Assembly: GCA_037379345.1 (NCBI GenBank)
Contig: CM074512.1
Location: forward strand, 36,642,001 to 36,706,000
Source: Perna viridis
Lineage: Eukaryota
DNA: 64,000 nt
Reading direction: 5' to 3'
The stretch's first letter is position 1; the number at the start of each line of letters is the position of its first letter. The position numbers and the translations under genes were made by a program. Under the pieces are notes generated by a model that was not told where the DNA came from, ran no database searches, and saw nothing but the letters and a program-made list of their open reading frames with translations. Shown piece after piece: positions 37,795 through 63,448 of the stretch.

Positions 37795-40700
37795 TTAATG
37801 AGGCTGGCGCCCGATTGTCGTTTTCTTACGAATGTGGTCCCTAATGCTGGAATGCAATCTCAACTTTGTAAGTACTTTATTTTCAGAAATTCTATCATCC
37901 GGATATCGATTCTTCCTTAAGACCAATTTCTTCAACATTCGTTCAATATTGTTCGGTTTTTCTTCTTTACCTACAATATGTACTAAGGTCCAGTTAAATG
38001 TGTTATATAAAACAGAGTTTACAACAGTTTTTGTTTTGTTTTGTTTTGTTTTGTTCCGAATTTCCTCTGATCCTGTAATACTCCTCTATTTTATTTGGAT
38101 ATTGATATGTCGGGTGGGGTCAGAACGATGTACCATACAAAAAGTTGGAGATTCAGCGGTACAGGGGCGGGTCCGGATAAGGGTGTAATGGGCGTAACCC
38201 ACCTTTTTAAATATGTCATGATCTGGTATCCTTTTATATCGATTCTCGTAACTACGCCTTCCCTTCTTAAAATCCTGTATCCGCCCCTGGCGGAGTACCG
38301 CCCTTCAACCGCTTTGTTACGATTTTCAAGTTAAAATCGTGCATGTCACATTTACCTCGTTTGATTCCGGAATCATTTTTATGTATGATGAAACCATATT
38401 TGCTACATAAGTTGTATTTTTATCAGAATTATGAAATATTTTGTTAGATTCCGATTTTCAAAATCGTGTCTGCTCCATTTCGAACGAAAAGTAACAAGCT
38501 CCGCCTACTAGGAAATTCGGACTATATCTATACGCTCGCTGTAAAGTAACTGTTAGTCCAAAGCTGTTATAATACATGGAAGAAGTTGATCATGACCTGT
38601 TCATTGTATATAGTAGAAAACTGATTCCTTTGGGTTTGTGCTTTAACATTGAAGATGCAATGACACAATATAGGTATTCAACAGTCAATAGAATGAACAA
38701 ACACAGGAAAATATGCTTTCGTTGAGGGATCTTCTTGTTTTTTTAAAGCTCATGCTTGTCAACGTGTGATCACATACGCAGTGATTTAAGACAAAACTTA
38801 CACTCACTTGCCTGTCCTGTACCTCCCCTCAGTTCATCACTGCAGTCAAGTTCATCTGAGCTATCCTGACAGTCAACGTACAAATCACACCTAAATTCTT
38901 CAGCAATACACTGGCCGTAAGTTTTACAATGAAATTGGTCAGAGTCGCATTCCCAATCAATATCCGTTCCATTTTCATGTTGTTCAGATGTCATTTCTGC
39001 TGATGAAATACGTGCAACTTAGGGTAAAGAGTAATTAGGGAACCAAGATTATAGGAAAAATTAAAAGAATGAAGTCCAGGGACAAAGACCAGACATGGAA
39101 AACAAGACACACACACACAACACAGGTCAGACTTTGTAAAATAACAAAAAATAGTGCACACAAAGCAGCAAAAGTAAATGAAATCTTTTACGTTTGAAAA
39201 TGTTTTGCTAATTATTTAAGAAGAATAGCTAGAAAACAGATTATCTGAATATTTTTATAACCGCAAGATGATACGTTTAATTGTTTTCACTTGAAAAGTT
39301 GTTTTTTTTTTTTTTATTTTGTTGGCCAGAACATGTCTAAGCTTAAAAAATAGGTAAATGAACCAGATACGTCACTAAAATAGAAAATAAATTATAAGAT
39401 TGTATATCTAAAAGAGTAATCAAGGGAACCAAGGCCACAGCGGTAATCAAAAGAATGTAATCCAGGGACAAAGACCAGACATGGAAAACAGACATACACA
39501 ACAAAGAACATAAAGTAACTAAAATCATACATAGAAAGTAACAAAAGTAAATGAGCAACTCGGACTCCACTAAAAACTGGGAGCATGGACCAGGTGCACC
39601 GGTAGGGTAAGCGTCCTAGGATTTTATCTCAACTATATACGAATGATAAAATATACATACATTGTACACGGATACTACCACGGATTGTTAATGTATCTGG
39701 TCTTACGTGTACCAGATATTCAAAAAGATTTAATGTATAATTGGTGTCTGTGGGTGAATTTCAAAATACAAGTACTTTGTTTTGCCTCTTCATAGCTCGA
39801 TGTTCTGTACATCGAACTAACTCTAAAGTGAATCAATTACAAATCAATATGTTCATGTGTCCTTACTATCAGTCTCGTCCCAAACATCACAACTGGCTTC
39901 GTCAGAGGCATCCAGACAATCTACAAAGAAGTCGCATTCATAATCCCATGGAATACATTCATCGTCCATAGCACACTGGAACTCGTCGAGTGTACATTTT
40001 CTTGCTTTTGTTGGATTCTGGGTTGACGCTATATTTAAAAAAATAGGATAGTGCTATGTCAAATTAAAAATGTTGAAGCCAAACGGGTTACATGAAAATA
40101 ACCCAATTTGGAAACCCAAATATGTAACTTTTTGTGACTCTTTTTCTAGTTTAGAATATCGCTTTCCCCTTTCACCTTGGTAACAAAACACTTGTTTATA
40201 TATAAATAAAAAAGTTTGGAATGATGATTTGCATTATACATTGATAGTATCTCCTGTTTTATATCACTTTTATATGATTTATATCTTTATCAAACTATTG
40301 TGACTTTATGAACGTGAAAATTGTGAATAAAATGTATCAATTTATGCATTGTACTGGTTTTCGCTATTTTCTCGTTGGGCAAATACGCGCAAAATAAAAT
40401 AGTATCTACGCGATTAGTTTTTCACAATATTTTTCAAAACTGCGAATTCAATATCCGCGGATGCGTACCCACAAAAATCAATACGACTACAGTATCTTAC
40501 GTCCTGGTGTAACCCCTCCACCACCCATGGTACCGCTATCATCGCCACAAAATGCTTCATCGGAGTAATCTGAACAGTCTGGATAATTATTACATTTGAA
40601 ATTCTTGGGGAAGCATTGTCTATTACACTCGAACTCATCTTCTGTGCATTGGATTGTTAGAGTATTATCTGTATGGAATAATAAAAACATGTTCAAATGT

Positions 40701-42242
40701 TTAAAAAAAAACATGGTGCAAAAGGTCAAGTGAGGCGACAGTAAAATTATCATGTATCATGTAAATGCATCACAAGTTATAAATGAATTTAAAAGTTTAC
40801 CCATTTCGCCCTCCTTTAACATTGTTTTAGTCTTTCCTTCCATTCAATATATTATCCTCAATCTACTTGATCTTGTTTTTGCTTTCCATAGTTGCAGTTG
40901 CGTACACAGTTCATAACTGACATCTACCTTTAGTTTACATGTAGCTTAATTATGAATTTTACACATAGAACTAAAATCATTTAAAACACATACACGTACA
41001 CATACAGATAGACAACTGCCAAAAAAATTACCATGTTTCACTTGTAGGCTTTTCCATCAATGGTACAAATTACATTACCTGTACATCCGCGTTCGTCACT
41101 ACCGTCTGGACAGTCCAATATTCGGTCACATTTCCAGGAATCGTGGATACAGGTGTTGCCGCTGTCACATGGTGAATACTTGAATGGACATTGCGTTGAA
41201 ATGGGTTCTATGAAAGATATAGATAATTACAGTTGTGAATTAAAAGTACCATGAACCCATGCAATGTCCACGTTGCAGGGTTACCCGATAGTTAAGATGA
41301 CCATTAACCGTAATGTTTGACGAATGATTTTCTTTACTCTTTTTGTATGGAACGCCGTAGCTGTCTTATGTTAAATGATTTATTATATGCTGTTTGAAAT
41401 TATTTATATGCTGCGGGTTTGTTACATTGTACATGTATTATATGTTGGGGTTCCATTATTATATGTTTTGGTTCCAAGATTAAATGATGTGGTTTCATTA
41501 TTGTATGCTGTGGGTTTAATATTATGTGCTATGGTTCTATTCCGGAATACCGGTACATGCATTTATTTTTTTTACTAGACCCGACGGAGGAAAATGGCCG
41601 GTTCTATTACCGAAATACTATATCAGAACGTTACTTACAAAAGGCAGTGGACAAATTAACTCATCAACTGATTTACCTCCATTTTTGTTGCTTTGTAGAG
41701 CATTAAATGCAAAGAACCACAGCATATAATAATGGTACCACAACATATAAGTACAAACCAACAGCATTAAACAAACCATTGTTGTGACGTCAGCCTATTT
41801 TTTAACAGTGGATTCTTATTTTTTATGAAACGACGGTGGACAAGCAGTAGACAAAACTTACCAAAAATAACTCAGTGAGTAATTTTTAGAAAGTGTAAGC
41901 CGTTGCTCGATTTATTGGTTTCCCATTATTACCACTAGTCCAAAAAGAACTAATGAAAACGTTCTGTCATTTTTATTAACGTTGACTTCCGAATTTCCAA
42001 CCATTCAACATTAGACAGCTATATGTACAGTGTTCCATATTTTTGTATTCATTTGTTTTGTGTTATTTGACCAAAAAATTTGTATGGTCATTCTCTTTAA
42101 CTAAATGTTTTCCAGTGTTTTATTTCCTGCTTGTAAATTGATCAATAAACCAATGCTTACCCGCATATTTATGTTGCACAACAAATCCAAACGTAACTCC
42201 TATAAGACAGAACAGTGCTAGCCAAGTATTTGCTACCATCAT
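37795..42242 (-). CDS. Gene L1: secreted protein with signal peptide, 4 LDLa modules and a basic tail (~301 aa, no TM)
   Basis: Exons 42242-42161 (MMVANTWLALFCLIGVTFGFVVQHKYA, signal-peptide-like), 41207-41079 (CPFKYSPCDSGNTCIHDSWKCDRILDCPDGSDERGC), 40668-40501, 40028-39867 (CTLDEFQCAMDDECIPWDYECDFFVDCLDASDEASC), 38996-38808, 37970-37795 (SKEEKPNNIERMLKKLVLRKNRYPDDRISENKVLTKLRLHSSIRDHIRKKTTIGRQPH*). All introns are phase 1 and GT-AG; total 906 nt. Confidence 0.82.
38162..38289. mobile_element. Short MITE with CAGGGGCGG termini
   Basis: CAGGGGCGGGTCCGGAT ... ATCCTGTATCCGCCCCTG. Confidence 0.7.
39410..39617 (-). mobile_element. 3' tail of a Naiad-type Penelope element (second partial copy at ~39025-39125)
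   Basis: Reverse complement of the tail seen at 44745-44920 and 58685-58890. Confidence 0.8.
41383..41770. repeat. Foldback-like element with short subterminal repeats, in L1 intron 1
   Basis: Degenerate TATATGCTG(T/C)GG units at 41383-41535, mirrored by ACCACAGCATATA / ACCACAACATATA units at 41716-41770. Confidence 0.5.
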
Positions 42243-43179
42243 GCAAAATGCATTTGCGCTAGATTTCAGGCTATAAATACTGTTGATCTAAGCATAGGTG
42301 CATTTGACATTTCGAATGTCTAAGCGAGATTGAACGTTCGCTGACGTGATGAAAATAGTAAACAAAATACCTTTGATTTTGTACTTTAATAATTGTATAG
42401 AAATTCGAATTTATATGAGTTTTCACATAACAACATGCCACTTTTAATTTCCCTACTAACGATAGGTACGGTTGATCTTCAATAAATTTTTCTTCAAATG
42501 TTGTGGCATTTTGTATTGTACTAATCAGTCACACGAAATTAGATGTCAATTATAGAGGGCTTTAACTTCTGCGGTTTTCAGATTATATATATACAGGTTC
42601 TAACAAGGTATAAAATGTTCTTCTCACGTGTACAAACATGCTGTGGTACTAATATATAATACCACTAAATTGACGAAAGGACGGACATTTTAGTTAAGAG
42701 GGGATAGATGCAACAATAGTAGAAATAATGCACTAGGGTTACACTGTTTCCCATAGAATTGAAAATCTGATGAATGTGATATGTTTCTAACTATGCCTAT
42801 TACTCATTAGACTGAAAGGTTCGGTTGCGAAGGTGTATTATTAAAAGGGAAGGAAACTTTTAATTGTTAATTCTCGCACTCTTTTTTTCAACTTTATTAT
42901 AGTTTTCTTGCAGTTGTTTCAATTTTTTTTTAAGATAAGAGAAAAACGAAAACAATAACTTTGATGCTAAATTTTAAATTTGTGAAAAATTAACTGGATT
43001 TTTTTCTTTGCAAAATATTTGCGAAACCTTCACATATAATAATTTTAACATTATAAAGGCAATGTATGGGAACACGCCTATTCATTGAAGTAATCTCGGC
43101 GATGGTCTGACAGGTACATAACTATTCTGTATATCAGTCGGTACAATATATAATACATGTAATAGCAATCCGGTTCTTA

Positions 43180-43854
43180 CTCCAGCAGTGCTAGAGGTTG
43201 ACTGGAAAGCTATTTTCTGACTTGGTGCCATCCTAACCTCTAGCATCTGACATGTAGAAAGCCATCGCAAATATGAATAAGCTAAATATGTGTTTTAAAA
43301 TATTTTCAGTCTTTTGTTTACATAAAAGAAGTTTAACCCACCGGAAATCAAGCGATAAAAATCCGTATTTTTTTTGTAAAATACCCAGAAAACATTTGTA
43401 ATGAAGACAGTTATCAAAGTGACCAGCCATTTTGAATAACGTTGGTAAAGGCAATTCGTTAGTTAATTTAACATTTTCGTTTCGCAAATTAAAATCCATA
43501 AATTTATCAACCGGATGTACGCATTCAACATGCTGAAAACCAAATGTGAAGTACATTTAAACTTTTTTTTACAAGATTTCCAGGATTGCTGGATTTTCTC
43601 ATCAGGTAGGTCATTTTTTTCTTCGGTTTAATTATCTTCTCCCGTGTGAGAGTAAAGAAACTGTATAAAATGTTTTAAATGGTTAATATTTAACTATAAT
43701 AATTCTGCCGATTTCAAAGAAGGTCGGAAAGAGCGATATGCAATATGGTACTCGAAAGTAAGAGGTTGGAGTATCGAGGAACGGAATTTCCACCTCTTAT
43801 GTTGTAGGATTAGTCAGAAAGTAGCTTGACAGACAACCTGTAGCACTGTTGGAG
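43180..43854. mobile_element. MITE with ~44-bp imperfect TIRs and TA target duplication (Tc1/mariner-like)
   Basis: TA|CTCCAGCAGTGCTAGAGGTTG..TTTCTGAC ... GTCAGAAA..CAACCTGTAGCACTGTTGGAG|TA. Confidence 0.8.
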
Positions 43855-44568
43855 TACTATTACATGTATATACATATCTGACGTCAAACTTTTACTTAAA
43901 TATCATGTTGTACGGTAATACACCCATACTTAGTCATTCATGAGCATTCGTGTCTAACTCGTATGCAGTTACAAATAACTCTTAACTGTTACAACCCGTA
44001 GTCATTCGCTGGCATTTGTATCGATTCGAAAAAGGAGATGAAATTTATTTGGTATATTTAAAAAAAAATTAAATGCATGTCCACAAATTTTTTTAAAATT
44101 TTTTTATTAGTAAAGAGCTCGGAAACTACTAACCATTCGTAAGGCACCGTTAAACAACCTGTTTGGTTTGCTATTTTTGCGATTTTTTTACGATTTTTTA
44201 CGAGTCATCTACGAATGACTGTGAGTAGTCAACAATAGTTTTTCGATGGATAAACGAATAAACACGAATTAAAGAGAGCAGTTTGTGGATATATAGGAAT
44301 ACTTTGCCCAGGGCGGAGAGCGTTGGGCTGTCGTAGCTAGTAGGGGATAAGTCGAAAGATTTTTTGTATAGTAAAACATGGTCAAATGTTCAATTGAAGA
44401 GTGCATGGGGCTATTTGGCTTGAATTTATATGGCAAAGTGCAACTTCATTGAAAATCATTACCATTAGTAAAAACTCGTAACACAACTGCGAGTATTTAC
44501 CAGTAACGCTATTGTAACCATTCGCGTTTCGTTAATTACGTGAACGGAAAAAGTACAATGCTTTCGCA

Positions 44569-44610
<42 letters not shown>

Positions 44611-44710
44611 ATTTCATTTTATTTTATTTAGGGTTTTTGAGTTTTATTTGTGTACAACGAAGAACTGTATAAAAATATGGTTCTTAAATTAATGCCGTCC
44701 CCTAGGTTTT

Positions 44711-44922
44711 ATGAGCAACTCGGCGGGTGTATTTAGAAAAGCAGAGGACGCTTACCCTACCGGTGCACCTGGTCCATGCTCCCAGTTTTAAGTGGAGTCC
44801 GAGTTTATCATTTGCTTTTGTTACTTTGTATGTATGATTCTAGTTACTTTATGTTTTTGTTATGTATGTCTGTTTTCCATGTCTGGTCTTACCGCTAATA
44901 CCTTGGTTCCCTTGATTATTCT
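44711..44922 (+). mobile_element. 3' tail of a Naiad-type Penelope element
   Basis: Homologous to 58652-58890, which directly follows a PLE RT C-terminus. Confidence 0.8.
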
Positions 44923-45071
44923 TGCAAGGAGTTCCCCATTACACGGGACTAAATACGAACGGTACAGATATATAATTCTTCAGATCTCAGTTAATAACTG
45001 ACAATTCTTGCTTACAGTGTTGTGTTCTGTACCACAGAATAAAATGATAACAATTGATGTCAAATTGCAGT

Positions 45072-45252
45072 TTAGAAATACTTCCTGTGTGCGATAGATG
45101 GTCCAGACTCATCATATTCTTATTTGCCTATCCACATCTGTTGGAAGGTTGATAATAAGGCTAAGATAGAACCATCAATCCAGATTGAGTATTTTCTTTC
45201 TGATGGAGCAATGATTTCAAGGAGCAAGTGCGGCGATTTCTTTCTGCATTCT
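45072..45252 (-). pseudogene. ACT: Actin pseudogene fragment (C-terminal ~60 codons)
   Basis: Reads [58 protein letters not shown], matching the actin C-terminus with a frameshifting deletion and one premature stop. Absent from the ORF track. Confidence 0.93.
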
Positions 45253-46415
45253 TTACAATATCGTATGCATTCGTTATCTACCCTTATTTAATCGAAATGA
45301 ATCCTTTTTTAGTGATCGTTCATACTCGATACTAATCGTATTGCACTCGCAAAGATTCGTATTAGATTTACAAATCTTGTAAATATTTGAAATTCGTATG
45401 GAGTTGTAAGAAAGATTCGTGTTTGTGAAGGGAGTATACCAATAACTATTACTGTTCGTATTTAATCGTAATGATTCGTGAACTGCTTTTATATACACTT
45501 CGCATTTGTAAAGTGATCGTTCATAGTCGTTAATAATTCACAAGGATTCGTGTTAGTTTTGCGAATCTTGTAAATTTTTTATTCGTAAAGAAAGTTCGGG
45601 TAGGTGATAGGTATATCAAGGAATATCATGTAACATGAGACAGTTATTCGCTACCTGAAACGCTCCAGAAGAAACAAAAGTTTCAGGAATGCTTGGCATG
45701 ATCAGCCTTTTGTCCGAAGAGCCGCATATTCGTGAGAGTCTGCTGATGACAAAAAAATTATTCGACAGTACGGTGCCTTTTTATCTATTTCAGAAGCCGG
45801 GCGCCCCTTTCCGACATCTTTTCACAAGTCCAGAGCATACATTGTTAGTAGTTGCTCAGTGATCCAGAGACTTTGTAAAAAAAACTATTAGCGTTATTAC
45901 TTAATTGGTGGACAGTTTTAAAACCTCCTTACTAGATGGAACTTTTTGCAAGTAATTATGAACTCTAGTAATTGTGTGAATCAGAGCAATGTGTATTTCT
46001 ACCTAAAACAACGAATTTTTGTCATAATTAACTTAACAAAGACTTACAATATTGAATGAAAAAAACTCTCACCTTTTTTACGTGGACAGTACTTGATCAA
46101 GCCATTCATATTGCAAATAAAATAATAGTAATATACATGTATATTTGTATATTCAAATAATATATGATACAACATATTAAACTCAGAACGTCATTTAACA
46201 TGTCATTTTATCTGATATCACGAACTGATCATGACTCTGTGCCATCTTACTGAAATGGCTAACATGTAAAGAAAAAAAACACCATCCCTTTTTTACTCGT
46301 CTTATAAAACATATTATAAGTGAAACGGACAAGTAGGGTAGTGCATTTACACTAACGGTCCCATAAAAAAAAACTGATCGTCCCGTACAGGTTAAGTCAA
46401 GCATATCGCTACCAT

Positions 46416-47220
46416 TCACTCATTCATCTCTAAATCGTACTCGAAAACTTCCACTTGAGTTTCCATATACTCAGAACCACCATCACTACTACTCTCATCC
46501 TCTTCGTCATTCGCCTCTCCCTCTTCGTCGCTTGTCGCCTCCTCTCCTGTAAGATCGACAACAGTTGTATCTTTCTCTGTTGTTGTCACACGGTCGTCCT
46601 TAATTTGCATGGAAAAATGTAGGTGTCATTGTTTCCTCATCTTTCTGTTCAGGCGTTGTCTGAATCCCTTCACTTTTCAATGTGGTTATCTTTGGGTCAG
46701 CAACCCAAGATGAAGATAGAGTATTAACAGTCCCATCGGGAAAAACGACCTTTTCCTCCTCTTTTACGCAACTATAACCGTAACGAATTACTGTCCTAAC
46801 GTAATTGTTATTTGTTATTGCTTGTCTTCTAATTTGTTCCAAAGCTTTAGCTTCTGGAGCCTCACTAAAGGAACTGGGAGGGGCAAGAAACCGAGGTTGG
46901 TTCTTGCCCTCCCGTATGATATCTGAATTAGGCACAGCCAAATGAATGGAGTCCCATCCTCCTTGCATTGTCCGTTCCTCGTGAACGAGAGATATGTTCA
47001 TTGTGCCTGCGTTAGCGCATGTAGGTGGTTCTTTCACTTGCGACATCTGGCGGTTGAATGCATTGTTGGAGGTCAATTCTTTTCTGTGAGGGTTTGACGT
47101 CAATGGAGGTGGCAAATGATTAATACCCTCCGTACAAATGTCTAGTACTACTGGTTCATCTAGAATTTCTGGTGCCGTAGCAACCTGTGTTTCATCACTG
47201 ATGATATGATTCGGCATCAT
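46416..47220 (-). pseudogene. Unknown intronless ORF (~270 aa) split by a 1-nt frameshift, with an acidic C-terminus
   Basis: The 206-aa and 64-aa ORFs overlap at 46600-46610; removing one T from the minus-strand T5 run (~46613-46617) fuses them (TPTFSMQIKDD..). No family recognised. Confidence 0.45.
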
Positions 47221-48369
47221 TTGAAACAGGTTAGTTGTTTTATTTTTCGAACGCGCAAACCTACTTAACGTGCTTTTTCAAGGTTCCGATGTGTCTAGGA
47301 TATGCCCAGTCTCTCTGTCGCTCAACTCTTAATGCAAATATAATGACATCTGAAAATACAACATGAACGAAGCATTCAGAATCATATCTAAGAAAGACAG
47401 GATCAGCCAGTGACAAGAGAAACAGCATGTTTATTTATTTTCCGGATTACCTATAGAAATTATCTGTAAACCAATTTACTATACATCACTGCGCTTACTG
47501 TACGGTATACTCTACACATTTAACTAGATAGGCTTAAATAAACAATTCTATAAATTGCAAATAGCCCAGAGCGACTAATCAGTGGTCATCGGAGTTTTTA
47601 TTATCATAAGGCAAAATGCATGTATATTAGCGCAGCAGGATAAATATAACAACAATGCGTACTAAAGCAATCGCAAATAACATACATATGGTCATACATT
47701 GCATTTCAAAATACAAATAATGTGTAGCGAAGCATTCTATATCACGGACGGCCTCGCTGGTTAGGAAAACCACAAAACCCAACTGCAAGGTTGTGCAACT
47801 ACTTTATATGTAGGAAAGTTCTGTGGAAACCTGTGTCCATACCCAATGCGAAAGACTGTACCAAGAGTTATACCTGGACGAAGTATTAGTTTAGAATATT
47901 GGAAAACATAAAATAAAATAAATTATATATCTATAAAACATATTTATCAAATATTATTGAAAAATGTATAATCATAAGCAAAGACAAAATTATATCTACT
48001 ATATTTTTACTGCTGAAACTTGAGTGTTGACCAGTCAGGTGTAGGCTAGAAAGTGATTACAAAGGAAATATTCTACTATACTATCGAAACGTCGGAAATT
48101 ATACTTATTGGTTACAAGAAAAAAATCATAAGGCATGATCACCACTCATTATATGAAGCTTATTTAATAAGAAAGCGGGGTTTAGTACTGGGTAAAGTTT
48201 TAAATGTTAAAATGGCAAAAACATGAAAACAGGGGACAGAAGAGACGATCCACGTATACATGTTAACAAGGGAATAAAATACAATAACACACAAACTTCG
48301 TATAATAAAAACAAGAATGCACACTTTAAACTAAAGCAATTGTAAAATAAACTTCCACAAAATCAGTAA

Positions 48370-52250: not shown

Positions 52251-52426
52251 ACCTTGTGAAAAGTGTATACGTAAACGTCCATGATATGAAAGCTATTTCT
52301 ACCTCTTTTACATTTGTTATTATAACGTTGCAAAGCGGGAGGTATATAGTGATCATGATGTCTGTCTGTCCGTTCGTCCCTTCTGAATTTCGTTGAATTT
52401 ACTGGGTGCTGTCAAATAAATTTCTT

Positions 52427-52739
52427 GGGGCAGGGTGGTAGAGTGTTAGTCGTATGACTTGTAATAAGGAGGTTGACACCGCTGTGGGTTCAAATACCGC
52501 AGGTGTCCAGGTTTCCAGGCATCTTCCCTCCCCTGGGAGTTTCACCGATTTTCCGGTCTGGAATATCATACTTTCCTCCCCATCGGCCTGGCAACCATTG
52601 CGAGGAGCTCGTGCTAGCCAAACGGGCGTTAAAATTGCCGTCGGTTAAAAAAGCTCTACAGAGCTTAAATATGTTAGTTGTTGACTTGTAAAAGCACGTG
52701 TATTCACCGACAGTAAATAACATTTACCTTTACATTTTA
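52427..52739 (+). mobile_element. tRNA-derived SINE
   Basis: A-box-like TGGTAGAGTG, B-box-like GGTTCAAATAC, GC-richer body, TTTACC/TTTACA repeat tail. Confidence 0.6.
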
Positions 52740-53771: not shown

Positions 53772-53777
53772 TTTATT
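53772..53777 (-). terminator. Candidate polyadenylation signal of gene L2
   Basis: AATAAA on the minus strand ~90 nt after the stop codon; this motif is common in AT-rich DNA. Confidence 0.3.
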
Positions 53778-53865
53778 GTGCTAGATATTTCAAAAATATT
53801 CTTGATATTCAAATAATTAACGCATAAATTACATAGTTGGTCTAATTTTGAATGAGTAAATTTGT

Positions 53866-56800
53866 TCATCCATGTCTTTTTTGGGTCAAGTATCTTTTCT
53901 TTTTCTCAATCATACGTTTCTCCTTTTCCATCAAATAACGCTTCTTTTTCTCCATCATTTTCATTTTCTGTGCATGTCTGTCCATCATTTTGTGTTTTCG
54001 GATCAAGTTCTGTTTTTTAGCAAGGTTACGGTCGTTAATGTGTCTCCTCAAAGAGTTATGAAGGTTCTTCCTGGACATGTGCATTGCTTTCAACGCGGTT
54101 CGGACGACATTGTTGTTTCTTTGCGCGTGTCTCTTGCTCCTTGATTTCAGTTCTTTTAATAGTCTCTGAAACTCTTTCAGCATTGCTCGTCTACCTAATA
54201 GAGGTGAAATTGAAAAAGTTGGTCAGCATAGCAAATAGTTGACAAATGTTTGATCCTATTCGGAAATTCAGAAATCTTAAAAGTAGCGTATTACTTTATT
54301 ACCATCCCTTAGGTTTATACATGTATTACTTCATTACCATCCCTTAGGTTTATATATGTGTATTACTTCATTACCATCCCTTAGGTTTATGCATGTATTA
54401 CTTCATTACCATCCCTTAGGTTTATATATGTGTATTACTTCATTACCATCCCTTAGGTTTATACATGTATTACTTCATTACCATCCCTTAGGTTTATATA
54501 TGTGTATTACTTCATTACCATCCCTTAGGTTTATACATGTATTACTTCATTACCATCCCTTAGGTTTATATACATGTATTACTTCATTACCATCCCTTAG
54601 GTTTAATTCCAAGATTCATGTCTACATCATATATCATACTAAATGCTTTTAGCATCATAAGACGCTTGGTATATTAGGTTGTCTTTTTGTCTCTTTTTTA
54701 TCGTAATGTTAAGAATTATACTAAAGGATACTCTAGGTACCACTATATCCAACTCTGATTGATTGTCCATTCGGTTGGACTTTCTGACGCTAATCACTTT
54801 AACTTGAGAGCAAATGGGCAACACATAACGTGGCTTTCCTCGCCATTATAAATAATGGCCTAGGAACTTGACTTTCCACATAAAAAAATCAAAAAGCGTC
54901 TTCACTTCTTTTAAAGGATCGATCCACTTAAAGGATTGAAAGATGTTTATTGTAGAGGGCTCGCAAGTGTGTTACGACAAAAAAAAAACGGGCGTTATTG
55001 TCAGCATACACATATTTCACAATTTCATAGTCGAGATTGGTTAAATCTTTCCTGATGAAAACTTACTTGGAGAAGGGTTATTACAGTTAGCTTCATCAGA
55101 CCTATCTGGACAGTCCGTAAACCCGTCACATTTCTCTGAGGCCTGGATACACAGAGTGTTGTCAGTACATCTTACCATTGTGGCACTGGGACATCCTACA
55201 AATATTTTTGTATGAAGTACTGCTGAACAGTTCTACCCAGGAAAATGGTAATTAAATTGGTAATGCGTTATCAACCACTTGGCACACTTTGAGTCATGAT
55301 TTGTTCACTATTTGCAATGTATGGTTTTTGTGGGTACATTTGGTTCAAATAATAGCTTATAGGTATAGTTGCATAAAATATTGTTTCTAATGAAGAGTAA
55401 AACTGCAAGACTTAAAGTCATGAATTTAAAATCAATTGTCGAACCCAGAAATAATCAAAACACAATTTTGAAAATACAGTTTCAACAAGAAAAATAAAAA
55501 AATCGATGAATTAGTACCCCACCAGCGTCTATTAATTAAATTCAACCTAAGGGGCTCGGGGAGAAATTTGACGTTTCAAACACACAAAAGATGGTGTATG
55601 TTTAAGAAAATGAAATCTTAACATGTTTATCGATTCCAGTTTCGCTTAAGAATCTGTATAATATATTGTGATATCAGACCATTACTACATACCACTACAA
55701 CCTTCTTCGTCACCCCCATTGGTACAATCAGGAATACCGTTACATTTTTCTGTGCTTGGTATACAGTAGCTGTTGGGACATTTAAATTGGTCACTGGAAC
55801 AAGTAGTAGCTGTAAGATCAGGAAGTTTACTTTTATAAGTGTAGGCTCTTCTTTTACTTAAAATTTTCTGTAACCTGTGCACTTGGGTGTGCACGTTGTT
55901 TTAAAATATCAATGCTAATTAATTCATGTCCACTACTAAAAGATATTTGATTTTTATGTTGAGGTATTGCTTTGTGTTTTAAAAAATGTTGTATTTTTGT
56001 TTTAGGTATAACGAATGAATTTAAACGAAATCTACTAAATAATTTTACTTTGTCAAATTGAAAGACCAATAATGTGACTTGTACATGTACTACACGTAAA
56101 ATATTTCACATTTCAACAATATTTTAGACAGAAATGGTAAGCTATTGACCTTCCAATCTACTATACTGTAATACATACCTTCACAATTTTGCTCATCATC
56201 TCCAGTAGGACAGTCCTGGTAACCATCACAACGGGCGGAGGTAGCAACGCAGGTTACGCCATCTGAACACTTGAATTTTCCGGCTGGACATGTAAAGCCT
56301 GTAAAATTGCGAAAAATTCATAAGGCACCAAAGCTAAGGGCGGATGAAATCAGATTTAAAAAGTACTATCTTTAAAAAAAAATATAGCCGACGCAAATTC
56401 TCGCTTTGTTAATACAAAAAAAAAACTGATTAAGATCTTATTTGGTGACCTGTGTGATCACTGTGCAATGTTTCGTATTTCAATTAATAAATTGGTTCAA
56501 CAAGTAAACAATTTCCAATTATTCAATATATATTTTTGTATGAAAGTGATTGAAATATTCGGGAACCAATGCCCCCAATGGAGCCTGAAATTACACGGTT
56601 GCTATCACAATCAAGCTTCATATGTTAGGTTGCGATGGTTAAGCATCATGGATGTCACTTGATGTCAAAACAAACTCAATATCGAGTGGAAAAAAATATT
56701 GAAACTCGGTTTTCGTCCACTTCTATATTTTGTTAGTCCCTTACTTTGACACATTGAAGCGTCCTCGTCAGCTCCGTCATCACAGTCTTTGAACATATCA

Positions 56801-59800
56801 CACTTCGTAGAATCATCACCGCAATCTGTAGAAAAAAATCAAATTGGTGAGTCAAAGAATAGAAACGAGGTAAACGCTTCTTTTCGCAAAAAGAAAATTG
56901 AGTAACCACATGGGCAATGCAAATTGATCAATATTTAACAAACTTTTGAAAATCCACTGGAAACTCCAAACTTACTTCCGCCGCCGCCGCCACCACCACC
57001 ACCACCACAATTGGCCTCATCTGAATTATCATTGCAGTCTTTATAGTCGTCACATTCATATGAACCCGGATAGCACGTGCCGTCACTGACACATTGGAAT
57101 TCACCGTCTTTGCAGCCACCTGGGGCTGGAGTTGTAGTTGCTGAAAAAAAAAATCGGTTGCGTTTCTAAACTAAATATTAGTAATTTTTTTTAAAAAAAA
57201 GTAGTATTGACTAGTTTTACCATCTGTTGTTTTGGGAACGAGAGGTATGATAATGGTTTATGTTTAATTTCTTTAATTGTCAAATCCCGGAAATAAAAAA
57301 GCACATGTACTTGCCACAGACGACACAAAAACTACAAAAAAACAAATTATCAAAACGGATGACGGAAAAATGCCATTTCCGGAAATAATAATTAGAAAAG
57401 AAATCGAATTCAACTCATGTATATAATAATAGTGGGAGTAAACATAAATATTGTTCATATGTATATGGGTTTGAATATACAATTTAGAATTTACCACATC
57501 TTAATCGCATACTCGTTAATGCTTATGTACACGAAGCCAAACATATTTGTTTTCGATTATATTTCATTATTTCTTTGTCTTTTAAATGCCAAAAATATCA
57601 AAGCTCCAGTATTTACTGGGACAATTGGCCTCATCTGAATTATCATTGCAGTCTTTATAGTCGTCACATTCATATGAACCCGGATAGCACGTGTCGTCAC
57701 TGACACATTGGAATTTGCCGTCTTTGCAGCCACCTGATTATGATGGTGGACGGCAAATTTAAAGTAAAGGTTAAGGTCATCATAACTGACAGCTATTCAA
57801 AATTATGAGACAGTGTCCAAAAGATCACACAGGTTCTCTGAGGTAGTTACGGACACATTGGTATAATGAAGGGCAGATTTCTAGCTAGAGAGCTACTAGT
57901 ATTTAAATTAATCACAAGCCTACCTAAATTTGTATTGATATTGCAACTGGTCAATTTCAACTAACTGTAAAATAATCAGCCTTAAATGATGTTGCACTGC
58001 AAAGGTTTTGAATACTAGTATAAAATTAAGAATCTACCTCATCTTAATCGCATACTCGTTTATGCTTATGTACACGAAGCCAAACATATTTGTTTTCGAT
58101 TATATTTCATTATTTCTTTGTCTTTTAAATGCCGAAAATATCAAAGCTCCAGTACTTACTGGGACAATTGGCCTCATCTGAATTATCATTGCAGTCTTTA
58201 TAGTCGTCACATTCATATGAACCCGGATAGCACGTGCCGTCACTGACACATTGGAATTCACCGTCTTTGCATCCACTAGGGGCAGGAGTTGTTGTGGATG
58301 CTGAAACAAAATGATCCAAGTGTTTCGCGTGAACCATAACAGATATATGTTTCATTCCATTCCCGACGACCGTTTAACAAAAGCAGAGTTGATGTTTCTT
58401 ATATTATGCATTTAAGTACATAATTTAAATGAAGCTTGATCAGTTTAAACTCGATTCAATTATTTCTAACAAATAGGCTTCTGGAACGGGGTTATATGGC
58501 TACAAGATTGAAGTCATCACTACAGAAGTTTTATGGTCGTCATCATGAACTCGTGGATCGTTATGGTGTATCCATCTGCACCAAGAAAACTTATTTATTC
58601 AACGTGTCATAGTTTTCTTTTCCTTTTCGTCTACACCGGACTTGACTTTTTATGAGCAACTCGGCGGGTTTTCCAGAAAAGCAGAGGACGCTTAGCCTAT
58701 CGGTGCACCTGGTCCATGCTTCCAGTTTTTAGTGGAGCCCGAGTTGCTCATTTGCTTTTGTTACTTGGTATGTATGATTTCAGTTACTTCATGCTCTAAG
58801 TTGTGTACGTCTGTTTTCTATTTCTGGTCTTTGTCACTGGATTACATTCTTTTGATTACTGCTATAACCTTGGTTCCCTTGATTATTCTTTGGTGATCTT
58901 GGATGAATTCAGATGTTTATAAAAGGCGGTTTGAGGTTATAGTTTGCTAGTTTTTTGCAAAAATAAAATCGTGTTTGTGAAACAAAAAGAGGACTCTAAC
59001 CCCGGAAACTTCCCAGGATCCGCCACTTTTGATTACTACATGAACCTAATTATGAAAATTGGGATCAACAATTGTAAATGATTTAGATATTATGCTCTAA
59101 TACTTACTGGGACAATTGGCCTCATCTGAATTATCATTGCAGTCTTTATAGTCGTCACATTCATATGAACCCGGATAGCACGTGCCGTCACTGACACATT
59201 GGAATTGGCCGTCTTTGCAGCCACCTGATTATGATGGTGGATGGCAAATTTAAAGTAAAGGTTAAGGTCATCATAACTGACAGCTATTCAAAATTATAAG
59301 ACAGTGTCCAAAAGATCACGCAGGTTCTCTGAGGTAGTTACGGACACATTGGTATAATAAAGGGCAGATTTCTAGCTAGAGAGCTACTAGTATTTAAATT
59401 ACTCACAAGTCTAACTTAATTTGTATTGATATTGCAACTGGTCAATTTCAACTAACTGTAAAATAATCAGCCTTAAATACTGTTGCACTACAAAGGTTTT
59501 GAATACTAGTAGAATAAAATTAAGAATTGATCTCATCTTAATCGCATACTCGTTAATGCTTACGTACACGAAGCTAAACAGATTTGTTTTCGATTATATT
59601 TCATTCTTTTTGTGTCTTTTAAATGCCAAAAAATATCAAAGCTCCAGTACTTACTGGGACAATTGGCCTCATCTGAATTGTCATTGCAGTCTTTATAGTC
59701 GTCACATTCATATGAACCCGGATAGCACGTGCCGTCACTGACACATTGGAATTCACCGTCTTTGCATCCACTAGGGGCAGGAGTTGTTGTGGATGCTGAA

Positions 59801-62800
59801 ACAAAATGATCCAAGTGTTTCGCGTGAACCATAACAGATATATGTTTCATTCCATTCCCGACGACCGTTTAACAAAAGCAGAGTTGATGTTTCTTATATT
59901 ATGCATTTAAGTACATAATTTAAATGAAGCTTGATCAGTTTAAACTCGATTCAATTATTTCTAACAAATAGGCTTCTGGAACGGGGTTATATGGCTACAA
60001 GATTGAAGTCATCACTACAGAAGTTTTATGGTCGTCATCATGAACTCGTGGATCGTTATGGTGTATCCATCTGCACCAAGAAAACTTATTTATTCAACGT
60101 GTCATAGTTTTCTTTTCCTTTTCGTCTACACCGGACTTGACTTTTTATGAGCAACTCGGCGGGTTTTCCAGAAAAGCAGAGGACGCTTAGCCTATCGGTG
60201 CACCTGGTCCATGCTTCCAGTTTTTAGTGGAGCCCGAGTTGCTCATTTGCTTTTGTTACTTGGTATGTATGATTTCAGTTACTTCATGCTCTAAGTTGTG
60301 TACGTCTGTTTTCTATTTCTGGTCTTTGTCACTGGATTACATTCTTTTGATTACTGCTATAACCTTGGTTCCCTTGATTATTCTTTGGTGATCTTGGATG
60401 AATTCAGATGTTTATAAAAGGCGGTTTGAGGTTATAGTTTGCTAGTTTTTTGCAAAAATAAAATCGTGTTTGTGAAACAAAAAGAGGACTCTAACCCCGG
60501 AAACTTCCCAGGATCCGCCACTTTTGATTACTACATGAACCTAATTATGAAAATTGGGATCAACAATTGTAAATGATTTAGATATTATGCTCTAATACTT
60601 ACTGGGACAATTGGCCTCATCTGAATTATCATTGCAGTCTTTATAGTCGTCACATTCATATGAACCCGGATAGCACGTGCCGTCACTGACACATTGGAAT
60701 TGGCCGTCTTTGCAGCCACCTGATTATGATGGTGGATGGCAAATTTAAAGTAAAGGTTAAGGTCATCATAACTGACAGCTATTCAAAATTATAAGACAGT
60801 GTCCAAAAGATCACGCAGGTTCTCTGAGGTAGTTACGGACACATTGGTATAATAAAGGGCAGATTTCTAGCTAGAGAGCTACTAGTATTTAAATTACTCA
60901 CAAGTCTAACTTAATTTGTATTGATATTGCAACTGGTCAATTTCAACTAACTGTAAAATAATCAGCCTTAAATACTGTTGCACTACAAAGGTTTTGAATA
61001 CTAGTAGAATAAAATTAAGAATTGATCTCATCTTAATCGCATACTCGTTAATGCTTACGTACACGAAGCTAAACAGATTTGTTTTCGATTATATTTCATT
61101 CTTTTTGTGTCTTTTAAATGCCAAAAAATATCAAAGCTCCAGTACTTACTGGGACAATTGGCCTCATCTGAATTGTCATTGCAGTCTTTATAGTCGTCAC
61201 ATTCATATGAACCCGGATAGCACGTGCCGTCACTGACACATTGGAATTCACCGTCTTTGCATCCACTAGGGGCAGGAGTTGTTGTGGATGCTGAAACAAA
61301 ATGATCCAAGTGTTTCGCGTGAACCATAACAGATATATGTTTCATTCCATTCCCGACGACCGTTTAACAAAAGCAGAGTTGATGTTTCTTATATTATGCA
61401 TTTAAGTACAAAATTTAAATGAAGCTTGATCAGTTTAAACTCGATTCAATTATTTCTAACAAATAGGCTTCTGGAACGGGGTTATATGGCTACAAGATTG
61501 AAGTCATCACTACAGAAGTTTTATGGTCGTCATCATGAACTCGTGGATCGTTATGGTGTATCCATCTGCACCAAGAAAACTTATTTATTCAACGTGTCAT
61601 AGTTTTCTTTTCCTTTTCGTCTACCCCAGACTTGACTTTTTATGAGCAACTCGGCGGGTTTTCCAGAAAAGCAGAGGACGCTTAGCCTATCGGTGCACCT
61701 GGTCCATGCTTCCAGTTTTTAGTGGAGTCCGAGTTGCTCATTTGCTTTTGTTACTTGGTATGTATGATTTCAGTTACTTCATGCTCTAAGTTGTGTACGT
61801 CTGTTTTCTATTTCTGGTCTTTGTCACTGGATTACATTCTTTTGATTACTGCTATAACCTTGGTTCCCTTGATTATTCTTTGGTGATCTTGGATGAATTC
61901 AGATGTTTATAAAAGGCGGTTTGAGGTTATAGTTTGCTAGTCTTTTGCAAAAATAAAATCGTGTTTGTGAAACAAAAAGAGGACTCTAACCCCGGAAACT
62001 TCCCAGGATCCGCCACTTTTGATTACTACATGAACCTAATTATGAAAATTTGGATCAACAATTGTAAATGATTTAGATATTATGCTTAAAAGGGATTATT
62101 AAAATGCAGTAAACAAAAAGTCAATGTTATTTATTTTCATATCTTTGTGCCCGTTGTTAACTTTTCCTTAAATATCTTCTCAGAAAATCGCTCAGTGGAT
62201 TTATATCAAATTTGCATTGTCCCCAGCATCCTTGCCGTATCTAAAACTTATTTCGATTATGCAGATCAAAGGTAAACATGGCCGCTGTTGCTATTTTTGC
62301 AGCACATGGGTCAGGTCACCAATTTCTACATATATTCAAAAACTATTAAAGATATTAGCAAATAAATGTGACCGTCCTTCAGCTTGAAAAACTTTATACA
62401 AGTCTCTGTTTGGTTGAAGTTGTACAACGATTACGCAAAATATCGAAATAAACTGTGATTGTTGAAATTATCCTTATGACAAGGCCTACAGAAGTCATAA
62501 ACATTTAGTCTTAAATAGTGGGAGTAAATGTAAATATTATATTGCTGTACTGCCTAGATTTCAATTGATTATACAATTTAGAATTTACCTGATCTTAACG
62601 CATTCTCGTTAATGATTATGCGCGCAAAGCTAAACAAATATGTTCTCAATCATATTTGTTTTATCGTTCGTCTCTTCCAAAGCTCCAGTACTTACTTCCA
62701 CAATTGGCCTCGTCTGAATTATCATCGCAGTCTTTATAGTTGTCGCATTCAAATGAACCCGGATGACACGTGCCGTCACTGACGCATTGAAATTCTCCAT

Positions 62801-63448
62801 CTTCACATTGTGATGGTCTAGGTGTTGGAGTTGTGTCTTAATTACAATAAAAATGGAGGAGAAGGATAATATATCAATCGTAATGCTTTATACAGATTCA
62901 GTTATAATCACTTGTTCATAATTTAAGAATAAATTTTCCAGTCGTCTCCAGTTCAGTATGGCGTTTTAACTCTCAGTAGGTCATCTAAAAACTTTCTTAT
63001 TACACTTAGTTCGATTCTCAAGTTACGAATTGCAAACGATAAAGATGTACATTAAAATCTAGTAAGCTTTCTAAGATTAATTCTACTTTGAAACAACATC
63101 TTTCTATGACATTTATTTGTGCACTTTGTTTTAAGAAATGTTTGGGGGCAATGTTTGCCTATACATTTTGTATTTTCAAAGTTGAACAGTTTCATGCCTT
63201 TTTCAAAGGGTTCATATTCAAAATTTCAAATTTTGTAATAGCTGCTGTGACTCAAACCATATCACTGAAGTGAGGTTCAAAGTGTCATGATCTTGCAAAA
63301 ACGGGCTGAGTTTAATACATACCATCACATCCACATTCGTCACTTCCGTCCATGCAATCAGCTATGCCATTGCATCTTCCATTTATGTCAATACAAGTCA
63401 TATCTTTACATTGAAATTCATTAACTGTATCACACATATCAGTCTCTT
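53866..63448 (-). CDS. Gene L2: multi-LDLa protein (13 modules visible) with a very basic C-terminal tail and no TM; start exon not found
   Basis: Phase-1 exons 63448-63323, 62836-62696, 61290-61150, 60719-60603, 59795-59655, 59224-59108, 58300-58160, 57733-57617, 57140-56976, 56825-56745, 56298-56179, 55809-55693, 55195-55067, each encoding one LDLa (e.g. [36 protein letters not shown]). Terminal exon 54194-53866 reads [26 protein letters not shown]. Confidence 0.88.
54299..54604. repeat. Minisatellite with alternating 35/37-bp monomers (72-bp higher-order unit), 9 cores
   Basis: CCATCCCTTAGG starts at 54302, 54337, 54374, 54409, 54446, 54481, 54518, 54553 and 54590. Confidence 0.93.
58466..58890 (+). 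mobile_element. 5'-truncated Naiad-type Penelope element, copy in unit 1
   Basis: [48 protein letters not shown] followed by the 3' tail; no C-terminal GIY-YIG after the RT. Confidence 0.82.
59961..60385 (+). mobile_element. Same PLE fragment, unit 2
   Basis: Copy of 58466-58890 at +1495. Confidence 0.82.
61456..61880 (+). mobile_element. Same PLE fragment, unit 3
   Basis: Copy of 58466-58890 at +2990, with a few substitutions. Confidence 0.82.

What the first reader, a model, noticed from the sequence alone, without database searches (positions are those of the whole stretch)
37795..63448. Candidate new system: tandem family of secreted 'LDLa array + polybasic tail' proteins carrying both a lysine-binding module and a lysine-rich ligand
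Seen: two same-strand genes made only of single-LDLa phase-1 exons followed by a K/R-rich last exon. L1 has a signal-peptide exon. Neither shows EGF, YWTD, protease or TM sequence. Most modules keep the (W/Y/F)xCDxxxDCxDxSDE-type acidic cage. The L2 tail has 36 K+R against 8 D+E in 105 aa, plus 7 His and 10 Met. Known: LDLa modules bind Lys side chains of basic helices (RAP, apoE) in a Ca2+- and pH-dependent way, and sea-urchin fertilization-envelope proteins (SFE1, SFE9, proteoliaisin) are secreted LDLa arrays. Inference: head-to-tail, Ca2+/pH-triggered self-assembly into an extracellular material (cement, shell or periostracum matrix, egg coat, mucus), or self-masking of a cationic peptide until secretion. 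Automatic annotation would probably mislabel these as LRP- or SORL1-like. L2 secretion is inferred from L1 only.
Basis: partly seen in the sequence, partly recalled or inferred. Interest (0 to 1): 0.85.

Follow-up and report, generated by a model that had tools for sequence, protein, structure and literature searches.

The report
Secreted LDLa arrays with basic tails
Two neighbouring genes in what looks like a mussel-type bivalve genome encode strings of calcium-binding LDL-receptor-type modules ending in a positively charged helical tail; the anatomy is real and the long tail is conserved in one other genome, but the function, and whether the tail binds the modules, is untested.

Summary
On the minus strand, 17 LDLa modules sit one per exon. 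Every internal exon is phase 1-1 with canonical AG/GT sites. They form two arrays. L1 has a signal-peptide-like exon, four LDLa exons and a basic last exon. L2 has 13 LDLa exons, one a half-module, and a 108-aa last exon with net charge +30. The L2 tail is a real coding exon. Its only relative among 1.84 billion representative proteins lies on a short genomic contig from another sample. Similarity there begins at the AG acceptor and stays within the exon, with dN/dS about 0.18. AlphaFold2 predicts one long helix, and the sequence is amphipathic. It matches no Pfam family or solved structure.

Three weaknesses remain. L2's 5' end lies outside the window. The L1 tail exon has no detected relatives and several alternative acceptors. 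Similarity between the two tails is marginal. Two 1495-bp units carrying exon pairs differ at one base, so they are a very recent duplication or an assembly artefact. No transcript evidence was obtainable.

Self-binding of the tail to the LDLa cages is chemically plausible but untested, and anchoring to other polyanions is about equally likely. I rate this a new variant of a known kind, of moderate interest.

The parts
42161..42242 (-). L1 exon 1. It starts with ATG, has a hydrophobic signal-peptide-like segment (MMVANTWLALFCLIGVTFG...) and ends in phase 1 at a GT donor.
   Evidence: A TATA-like TATTTATA lies about 30 nt upstream of the ATG. No signal-peptide predictor was available, so cleavage is inferred.
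41079..41207 (-). L1 LDLa exon 1, with a full W + acidic cage
40501..40668 (-). L1 LDLa exon 2, with an F cage and a Gly-rich linker
39867..40028 (-). L1 LDLa exon 3, with a Y cage
38808..38999 (-). L1 LDLa exon 4, with an F cage and very acidic flanks
37795..37970 (-). L1 putative last exon: 57 aa, 17 K+R against 7 D+E, followed by a stop codon. The acceptor is uncertain.
   Evidence: alternative in-frame acceptors at 38072, 38066 and 37982. AF2 predicts two helices with pLDDT 74. No relatives were found. ATTAAA lies at 37786.
63323..63448 (-). First L2 LDLa exon visible in the window. It has an upstream acceptor, so it is not the first exon of the gene. It lacks the aromatic cage residue.
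62696..62836 (-). L2 LDLa exon with a Thr/Pro linker and an F cage
61150..61290 (-). L2 LDLa exon, long type (STTTPAPS linker), in tandem unit 3
60603..60719 (-). L2 LDLa exon, short type, in tandem unit 3
59655..59795 (-). L2 LDLa exon, long type, in tandem unit 2
59108..59224 (-). L2 LDLa exon, short type, in tandem unit 2
58160..58300 (-). L2 LDLa exon, long type, in tandem unit 1
57617..57733 (-). L2 LDLa exon, short type, in tandem unit 1
56976..57140 (-). L2 LDLa exon followed by a Gly10 linker
56745..56825 (-). L2 half-module exon: only the C-terminal, Ca2+-binding half, with 4 Cys and no aromatic residue
   Evidence: (E 4e-4)
56179..56298 (-). L2 LDLa exon with a degenerate cage (A at the aromatic position, T at one acidic position)
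55693..55809 (-). L2 LDLa exon with a degenerate cage
55067..55195 (-). Last L2 LDLa exon. It has the acidic residues but no aromatic residue, and its phase-1 donor reads in frame into the tail exon.
53866..54194 (-). L2 last exon: 108 aa, 38 K+R against 8 D+E, net charge +30, predicted as a single long amphipathic helix, followed by a stop codon
   Evidence: It has the best acceptor and the longest in-frame ORF downstream of the last LDLa donor. Its single relative is P0001 on L001. Conservation starts at the AG acceptor. dN/dS is 0.18 and differences are commonest at third codon positions. AF2 gives a helix over residues 2-107 with pLDDT 94.7. AATAAA lies at 53777.

Best explanation
What it is (mostly shown). 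Two adjacent minus-strand genes lie in a bivalve, probably mytilid, genome. They encode strongly acidic, Ca2+-binding arrays made only of LDLa modules, and each ends in a lineage-restricted cationic helical C-terminal exon. L1 has 4 modules. L2 has at least 12.5, expanded by very recent tandem duplication of a two-exon unit.

L1 starts with a signal-peptide-like exon and shows no membrane anchor. It is most simply a small soluble secreted protein of roughly 300 aa.

How it most likely works (inferred). 12 of the 17 modules keep the aromatic-plus-aspartate cage that, in LDL-receptor-family modules, grips basic side chains, best of all proximal pairs of them. The L2 tail is a 108-aa helix with net charge +30 and 14 dibasic positions, tethered to that array. 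It is therefore the nearest and most concentrated ligand the cages will meet.

I propose that the tail docks onto LDLa cages of the same or a neighbouring molecule. Binding would be Ca2+-dependent and weakened by acid or by competing polyanions. It would keep the array latched or self-associated until another basic ligand or an anionic surface displaces the tail.

Whether the outcome is autoinhibition, a RAP-like built-in chaperone effect or polymerisation into a material cannot be decided here.
For: Anatomy:
- 17 modules lie on one strand. All internal exons are phase 1-1 with canonical splice sites.
- PF00057 is above its gathering score.
- The closest solved modules are from LRP2, VLDLR and LDLR, and Y/W/F aligns with the ligand-contact Trp.
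- 12 of 17 modules have the full cage.

The tail exon is real and spliced:
- The phase-1 donor of the last LDLa exon reads in frame into the tail.
- It has the best polypyrimidine tract and the longest ORF among downstream candidates.
- Conservation with L001 starts at the AG acceptor and is confined to the exon.
- The two substitutions in the 11 nt before the internal ATG fall on third codon positions in the spliced frame and are silent, since both tails read RRAM there.
- dN/dS is 0.18 with dS about 1.8.
- Differences are commonest at third codon positions.

Tail properties:
- Charge is conserved: +30 in the window and +29 in L001.
- AF2 predicts one long helix with pLDDT 94.7.
- The amphipathic moment is z = 3.0 against shuffles.

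Charge blocks: per-exon D+E minus K+R sums to about -90 for the L2 array and -38 for L1, against +30 and +10 for the tails.

Binding rule: proximal positive pairs dominate binding to LDLa/CR modules, and Arg and His also bind (PMC3304490).
Against: - There is no transcript or protein evidence for either gene. Nothing tests binding.
- The five L2 modules without the aromatic residue include the four nearest the tail. An intramolecular latch would have to reach back past them.
- Any polybasic sequence would satisfy the LDLa binding rule, so the fit is not specific.
- The L1 tail is short, has only +10 net charge, is not significantly amphipathic, has an uncertain acceptor and has no relatives. 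The model may apply to L2 only.
- L2's 5' end is unseen, so other domains or an anchor may exist.
- The AF2 helix comes from a 3-sequence alignment. A +30 helix is unlikely to be stable alone.
Confidence: 0.35

Rival explanations
1. The tail is a polyanion anchor. The cationic helix tethers a soluble LDLa ligand trap to sulfated glycans, mucus, acidic shell or byssus matrix, mineral or membranes. This is how the polybasic C-terminal tails of many secreted cysteine-rich proteins work (TFPI, EC-SOD, R-spondins and class 3 semaphorins, named from general knowledge). The LDLa array would then capture foreign basic ligands such as lipoproteins, protease-inhibitor complexes, toxins or viruses, and not its own tail.
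For: - The tail has net charge +30, is helical and amphipathic, and its charge is conserved across two genomes.
- The array is free of other domains within the window.
- LDLa proteins are listed among candidate adhesive components in a scallop foot secretome (PMC9168380).
- The modules nearest the tail have degenerate cages, which fits a tail that points away from the array.
Against: No binding or localisation data exist. A polyanionic array (about -90) on the same chain would compete with any external polyanion, so self-interaction must at least be overcome.
Confidence: 0.3
2. L2 is only the 3' part of a larger mosaic gene. Exons upstream of the window would add other domains, a signal anchor or a much longer array, so 'LDLa-only' is an artefact of the window edge. 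This does not exclude either tail model.
For: - The first visible L2 exon begins at an AG acceptor in phase 1.
- No signal-peptide-like exon lies in the 550 nt that remain upstream.
Against: - L1, which is complete in the window, shows that a signal peptide + LDLa array + basic tail architecture is possible.
- L1's first intron is 953 nt. A signal-peptide exon for L2 just beyond the window edge is therefore the simplest expectation.
Confidence: 0.3
3. The tail is a released cationic peptide, either antimicrobial-like or signalling. The acidic LDLa array would serve as a neutralising pro-region, with cleavage by a proprotein convertase at the conserved RSKR or at the RR at the exon start.
For: - RSKR at tail residues 18-21 and RR at residues 1-2 are conserved in both genomes. 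They lie in the most conserved block of the tail.
- The tail is cationic and amphipathic.
Against: - By my estimate from the tail's K/R content, about one RxKR motif per tail is expected by chance. Only its conservation counts as evidence.
- An 87-aa fragment is long for a helical antimicrobial peptide.
- A pro-region of 13 or more modules would be extravagant.
- The L1 tail has no RxK/RR motif.
Confidence: 0.08
4. The tail is a coiled-coil oligomerisation domain that bundles several LDLa arrays, as the C-terminal coiled coils of matrilins do.
For: AF2 predicts a long uninterrupted helix. The first 15 residues show 3-4 hydrophobic spacing.
Against: - Heptad a/d enrichment is not above shuffles. 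200 of 500 shuffles reach the observed maximum and 60 of 500 reach the observed mean.
- A net charge of +30 disfavours homo-oligomers.
Confidence: 0.07
5. Part of the picture is artefact. The L1 'tail' may be a mis-modelled exon, with L1 ending by read-through or elsewhere. The near-identical 1495-bp units may be an assembly duplication. The 'tandem family with a shared tail' would then reduce to one gene with a tail plus a neighbouring LDLa gene.
For: - The L1 tail has four alternative in-frame acceptors and a weak polypyrimidine tract.
- It has no relatives.
- Its similarity to the L2 tail is marginal, and it has none to the L001 tail.
- Units 58625-60119 and 60120-61614 differ at 1 of 1495 nt.
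Against: - The frame stays open for 92 codons in 34% GC DNA and joins in phase 1.
- Both tail exons begin with AG|GTA and have an LK.L motif within their first 15 residues.
- An older unit at 96.8% identity shows the duplication is a real, continuing process.
Confidence: 0.2

Closest known systems
Ligand-binding clusters of LDL-receptor-family endocytic receptors (LDLR, VLDLR, LRP1, LRP2/megalin)
   Same: - The modules are canonical LDLa (PF00057) with six Cys and the acidic Ca2+ cage.
- Best PDB matches are LRP2, VLDLR and LDLR modules.
- There is one module per phase-1 exon. From general knowledge, the LDLR gene is built the same way.
- The expected ligand chemistry is the same: pairs of basic residues (PMC3304490).
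   Different: No EGF-precursor/YWTD propeller, transmembrane segment or cytoplasmic NPxY tail is seen in the window. L1's model runs from a signal peptide to a stop codon without them. The C-terminus is a cationic helix instead.
Sea-urchin fertilization-envelope proteins SFE1, SFE9 and proteoliaisin (secreted LDLa-repeat structural proteins)
   Same: They are secreted proteins dominated by LDLa repeats and assemble into an extracellular structure. This rests on general knowledge. The open literature found here only mentions them in reviews.
   Different: They come from a different phylum and no orthology was tested. As far as I know, no polybasic helical tail is described for them. Expression of L1 and L2 in eggs is unknown.
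RAP (LRPAP1), the ER chaperone and universal antagonist of LDLa clusters
   Same: It is a lysine-rich helical polypeptide of similar size (D3 is about 100 aa). It binds tandem LDLa modules through spaced lysines and lets go at low pH (general knowledge; PMC8239462 title and abstract). This is the functional analogy behind the self-ligand model.
   Different: - There is no sequence similarity: no Pfam RAP domain even at E up to 10 and no PDB sequence hit.
- The tail is predicted as a single helix, not a three-helix bundle.
- It has no HNEL/KDEL-type ending.
- It is covalently attached to the array instead of being a separate protein.
Secreted cysteine-rich proteins with polybasic heparin-binding C-terminal tails (TFPI, EC-SOD, R-spondins, class 3 semaphorins)
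   Same: The architecture is disulfide-rich modules followed by a K/R-rich C-terminal tail, often with convertase sites (general knowledge). The L2 tail has a conserved RSKR.
   Different: The module types are unrelated. This is an analogy, not homology. The L2 tail is far longer (108 aa) and is predicted to be helical throughout.

Membership tests
LDLa / Ldl_recept_a domain (PF00057) | Pfam profile match above the gathering score | tested here: met
   The four LDLa-containing ORFs submitted score 33.7-38.3 bits against a cut-off of 24.1. All 16 full modules score E 1e-15 to 1e-20 with an HMM built here from the window's own modules.
LDLa / Ldl_recept_a domain (PF00057) | Six cysteines and the acidic Ca2+ cage (D/N..D.D..DE), with an aromatic residue two positions before Cys IV | tested here: met
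   16 exons have at least 6 Cys (15 have six; exon 63448-63323 has seven) and one is a 4-Cys half-module. 12 of 17 modules have the full aromatic + acidic cage, and 5 lack the aromatic residue or one acid.
LDL-receptor family endocytic receptors (LDLR/VLDLR/LRP) | EGF-precursor homology region with a YWTD beta-propeller | tested here: not met
   The ORFs submitted to Pfam gave no such domain. The L1 model is complete without one. For L2 this holds only within the window.
LDL-receptor family endocytic receptors (LDLR/VLDLR/LRP) | Single transmembrane segment and a cytoplasmic tail with an NPxY motif | tested here: not met
   Both models end in a hydrophilic basic exon followed by a stop codon. 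No TM predictor was available, and alternative splicing past the tail cannot be excluded.
RAP / LRPAP1 | Sequence membership (Pfam Alpha-2-MRAP domains) and a three-helix-bundle D3 fold | tested here: not met
   There was no Pfam hit even at E up to 10 and no PDB sequence hit at E up to 10. AF2 predicts one continuous helix.
RAP / LRPAP1 | Ca2+-dependent, pH-reversible binding to tandem LDLa modules through lysines | not testable with these tools
This needs ITC, SPR or pull-down assays.
Sea-urchin fertilization-envelope LDLa proteins (SFE1, SFE9, proteoliaisin) | Secreted, LDLa-dominated architecture | tested here: inconclusive
   L1 fits: a signal-peptide-like exon and only LDLa modules. L2's N-terminus is unseen.
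Sea-urchin fertilization-envelope LDLa proteins (SFE1, SFE9, proteoliaisin) | Cortical-granule or egg expression, incorporation into an egg coat, and orthology | not tested
   No expression data or echinoderm sequences were available through the tools, within the length limits of exon-by-exon searches.
Coiled-coil oligomerisation tails (matrilin-type) | Significant heptad a/d hydrophobic periodicity | tested here: not met
   Heptad enrichment is not above shuffles.

The most novel reading that the evidence does not exclude
L2, and perhaps L1, is a self-complementary block polyampholyte: an acidic, Ca2+-loaded array of lysine-binding cages covalently linked to its own polybasic helical ligand. 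Head-to-tail docking would give a Ca2+- and pH-switchable extracellular polymer or coacervate, such as mucus, an adhesive, or an egg or shell matrix. Alternatively it would act as a built-in RAP-like latch that keeps the cages closed until secretion. Either would be a previously undescribed use of the LDLa-lysine interaction as a materials or auto-regulatory principle.
Probability: 0.15. Interest if true: 0.75.

Novelty: new variant of a known kind. Interest (0 to 1): 0.4.

Why it matters
If the tail really is the array's own ligand, this would be a natural case of a receptor-type binding module and its ligand fused in one secreted chain. That would give a simple Ca2+/pH-switchable assembly or latch principle, of interest for invertebrate extracellular materials and for LDLa biology. 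If the tail is only a matrix anchor, the genes are one more lineage-specific secreted LDLa protein in a bivalve, with a nearly orphan tail domain. Either way, automatic annotation is likely to mislabel them as LRP- or SORL1-like receptors. The near-identical exon-pair units also suggest that module number is changing rapidly.

Tried and rejected
1. RAP homology of the tail is rejected at the sequence and fold level: no Pfam or PDB hit and a single predicted helix.

2. Coiled coil: the heptad test is not significant.

3. Tail as a stand-alone small ORF starting at its internal ATG, which is how the public gene call for P0001 reads it. This is unlikely. Conservation begins 11 nt upstream of that ATG, exactly at an AG acceptor behind a pyrimidine tract. 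The two substitutions in those 11 nt fall on third codon positions and are silent in the spliced frame.

4. The antisense ORF across the tail (53872-54144, + strand) as the real gene is rejected. The most conserved 50 nt lie outside it, and differences are commonest at third positions of the sense frame.

5. The 206-aa and 64-aa ORFs at 46416-47220 as part of L1 or L2 are rejected. They are multi-copy and retroelement-associated in Mytilus genomes.

6. Further LDLa modules or a third family member in the window: none found.

7. Relatives of the L1 tail: none found within the 31-100 aa length band.

8. Relatives of the L2 tail: one only, in both large protein searches.

9. Literature searches found no description of an LDLa array with a polybasic tail in molluscs. 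The run accession of the related contig appears in no paper.

10. All searches were exon by exon, by reference. For that reason, annotated full-length homologues of about 300 aa or more could not be retrieved through the length-limited protein search. A structure search with the single-helix model was not run, because a lone helix gives meaningless matches.

Full report
**Setting.**
- The window is AT-rich (about 34% GC) and has no N runs.
- It is eukaryotic, with short exons and canonical introns.
- A repeat-derived ORF between the two genes has its annotated relatives in Mytilus edulis and M. coruscus, at 41-55% identity. One of them carries a reverse-transcriptase domain.
- The host is therefore a bivalve, probably a mytilid. 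This is an inference, not an identification.
- No contig handled here was taken for human.

**Observation.**
- All LDLa modules are on the minus strand.
- A pattern scan and an HMM built here from the window's own modules find 17 modules between 38808 and 63448 and none elsewhere.
- Pfam PF00057 is above its gathering score on the four LDLa-containing ORFs submitted.
- The nearest solved modules are those of LRP2, VLDLR and LDLR.
- Each module is one exon. Lengths are multiples of three, both flanking introns are phase 1, and acceptors and donors are canonical.

**L1 model.**
- It starts with an ATG exon at 42242-42161, encoding MMVANTWLALFCLIGVTFG... A TATA-like element lies about 30 nt upstream.
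- Four LDLa exons follow.
- The basic last exon is at 37970-37795: 57 aa, 17 K+R against 7 D+E.

**L2 model.**
- It has 13 LDLa exons from 63448 to 55067, one of them a half-module.
- Its last exon is at 54194-53866: 108 aa, 38 K+R against 8 D+E.
- 12 of 17 modules keep the aromatic residue and the complete acidic cage.
- The five exceptions are the first module and the last four of L2.

**Is the L2 tail a real exon of this gene?**
- The phase-1 donor of the last LDLa exon reads in frame into it (...[14 protein letters not shown]...).
- Among all in-frame candidates in the 6 kb downstream, it has the best pyrimidine tract and the longest ORF.
- A search of 1.84 billion representative proteins with the tail gave one hit, P0001 (E 8.7e-13).
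- The 5.8-billion-protein search gave the same single hit.
- P0001 lies on a 1078-bp genomic contig from another sample, L001.
- Nucleotide similarity between L001 and the window begins exactly at the AG acceptor and is confined to the exon. Intron and 3' flank are unalignable.
- The two substitutions in the 11 nt before the internal ATG fall on third codon positions and are silent in the spliced frame.
- dN/dS is 0.18 at a saturated dS of about 1.8.
- Differences fall 32, 23 and 48 on codon positions 1, 2 and 3.
- The tail is therefore a selected coding exon entered through the predicted acceptor, not a free-standing ORF and not the antisense ORF.
- Its junction to the LDLa exons in mRNA remains an inference. 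No transcript data could be reached.

**What the tail looks like.**
- It matches no Pfam family even at E up to 10 and no PDB sequence.
- AlphaFold2 on a three-sequence alignment gives one helix over residues 2-107, with mean pLDDT 94.7.
- The helical hydrophobic moment exceeds shuffles (z = 3.0), but heptad periodicity does not.
- Net charge is +30 in the window and +29 in L001.
- The most conserved block is [22 protein letters not shown], which contains an RSKR motif. By my estimate from the tail's K/R content, about one such motif per tail is expected by chance, so only its conservation is notable.

**Weak points.**
- L2's first visible exon has an acceptor, and nothing signal-peptide-like lies in the remaining 550 nt. 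The N-terminal part of L2 is unknown and 'LDLa-only' cannot be asserted for it.
- The L1 tail has four possible in-frame acceptors and no relatives in the searchable length band.
- The L1 tail has modest charge (+10), no significant amphipathicity, and a two-helix model of moderate confidence.
- The L1 tail resembles the L2 tail only marginally (BLASTP E 0.004; 15 of 2000 shuffles). It does not resemble the L001 tail at all (779 of 2000).
- 'Tandem family sharing a tail' is therefore plausible but not established.
- Three 1495-bp units, each carrying a long and a short LDLa exon, make up 57130-61614. Two of them differ at one base in 1495, introns included, and the third is 96.8% identical to both.
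- This is either a very recent, possibly polymorphic expansion or an assembly artefact.

**Mechanism.**
- Shown: an acidic array faces a cationic helix. Per-exon D+E minus K+R sums to about -90 for L2 and -38 for L1.
- From the literature: LDLa (CR) modules bind basic side chains in a Ca2+-dependent cage. [quoted passage not shown]
- From the literature: RAP binds LRP1 in a dynamic bivalent mode (PMC8239462, abstract).
- Inference: the L2 tail, with 14 dibasic positions, is the most concentrated ligand the cages will meet. Self-docking, within or between molecules, is the mechanism I commit to, at about 0.35.
- The chief rival, at about 0.3, is that the tail anchors the array to other polyanions. 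The degenerate cages next to the tail fit this slightly better.
- Release of the tail as a cationic peptide, and coiled-coil oligomerisation, are minor rivals.

**Comparison and novelty.**
- The modules are ordinary members of the LDLa domain family.
- Within the window the proteins lack the propeller, EGF, TM and NPxY features of the LDL-receptor family, so they should not be filed there.
- They work like, and may be analogous to, secreted LDLa-repeat structural proteins such as the sea-urchin fertilization-envelope proteins. No membership test could be run for these.
- The tail is not RAP. It is nearly an orphan, with one relative in the databases searched.
- Open-literature searches found no description of this architecture.
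- LDLa proteins are listed among putative adhesive components of a scallop foot secretome (PMC9168380).
- I rate it a new variant of a known kind, with interest 0.4.

Everything was done exon by exon, by reference. This is why full-length annotated homologues, a signal-peptide or TM call on the whole protein, and an LDLa-tail complex model are missing.

Noticed in passing
window 57130-61614 (units 57130-58624, 58625-60119, 60120-61614): There are three tandem 1495-bp units, each with two LDLa exons and their introns. The last two differ at 1 of 1495 nt, and the first is 96.8% identical to them. This is a very recent exon-pair amplification or an assembly artefact, and copy number may vary between individuals.
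   Followed up: partly
window 54288-54605: A minisatellite with 72-bp and 37-bp periods (about 4.4 and 8.9 copies, 91-97% matches) lies inside the last intron of L2, just upstream of the tail exon.
   Followed up: no
window 46416-47220 (-): Two adjacent ORFs of 206 aa and 64 aa (the second very acidic) lie between L1 and L2. Their relatives are multi-copy 'unnamed' proteins of Mytilus edulis and M. coruscus, one with a reverse-transcriptase domain. This is retroelement debris, not part of either gene. A 99%-identical copy exists on a Logan contig.
   Followed up: partly
window 39343-39586, 44776-45001, 58436-58922, 59931-60417, 61426-61912: Short repeated ORFs sit in introns and the intergenic space, with motifs such as ...SGVRV...LLLL...FDY... 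and ...[14 protein letters not shown]... From memory, they look like a dispersed bivalve repeat. Pfam finds nothing in the two copies tested.
   Followed up: partly
window 1979-7270 (+) and 21392-21664 (+): Unrelated neighbouring genes lie on the plus strand. There are filamin/ABP280-repeat exons (the 6953-7270 exon scores above Pfam's cut-off; the 1979-2284 exon scores 20.2 bits, below the 26.9 cut-off), with a long disordered ORF between them, and a scramblase-family exon.
   Followed up: partly
window about 56977-57006 (-) and 56745-56825 (-): A run of ten glycines, encoded by a GGT/GGC run, ends one LDLa exon. After a 150-nt intron comes an exon encoding only the C-terminal, Ca2+-binding half of a module (4 Cys).
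   Followed up: no
window 54130-54141 (-); L001 457-468: An RSKR motif (proprotein-convertase type) is conserved at residues 18-21 of the L2 tail in both genomes, inside the most conserved block. Chance expectation in this composition is about one per tail (my estimate).
   Followed up: partly
window 53872-54144 (+); L001 454-720 (-): The strand opposite the L2 tail exon is also open for about 90 codons in both genomes. This is probably a by-product of the AAR-rich sense codons. The best-conserved 50 nt of the exon lie outside it.
   Followed up: yes
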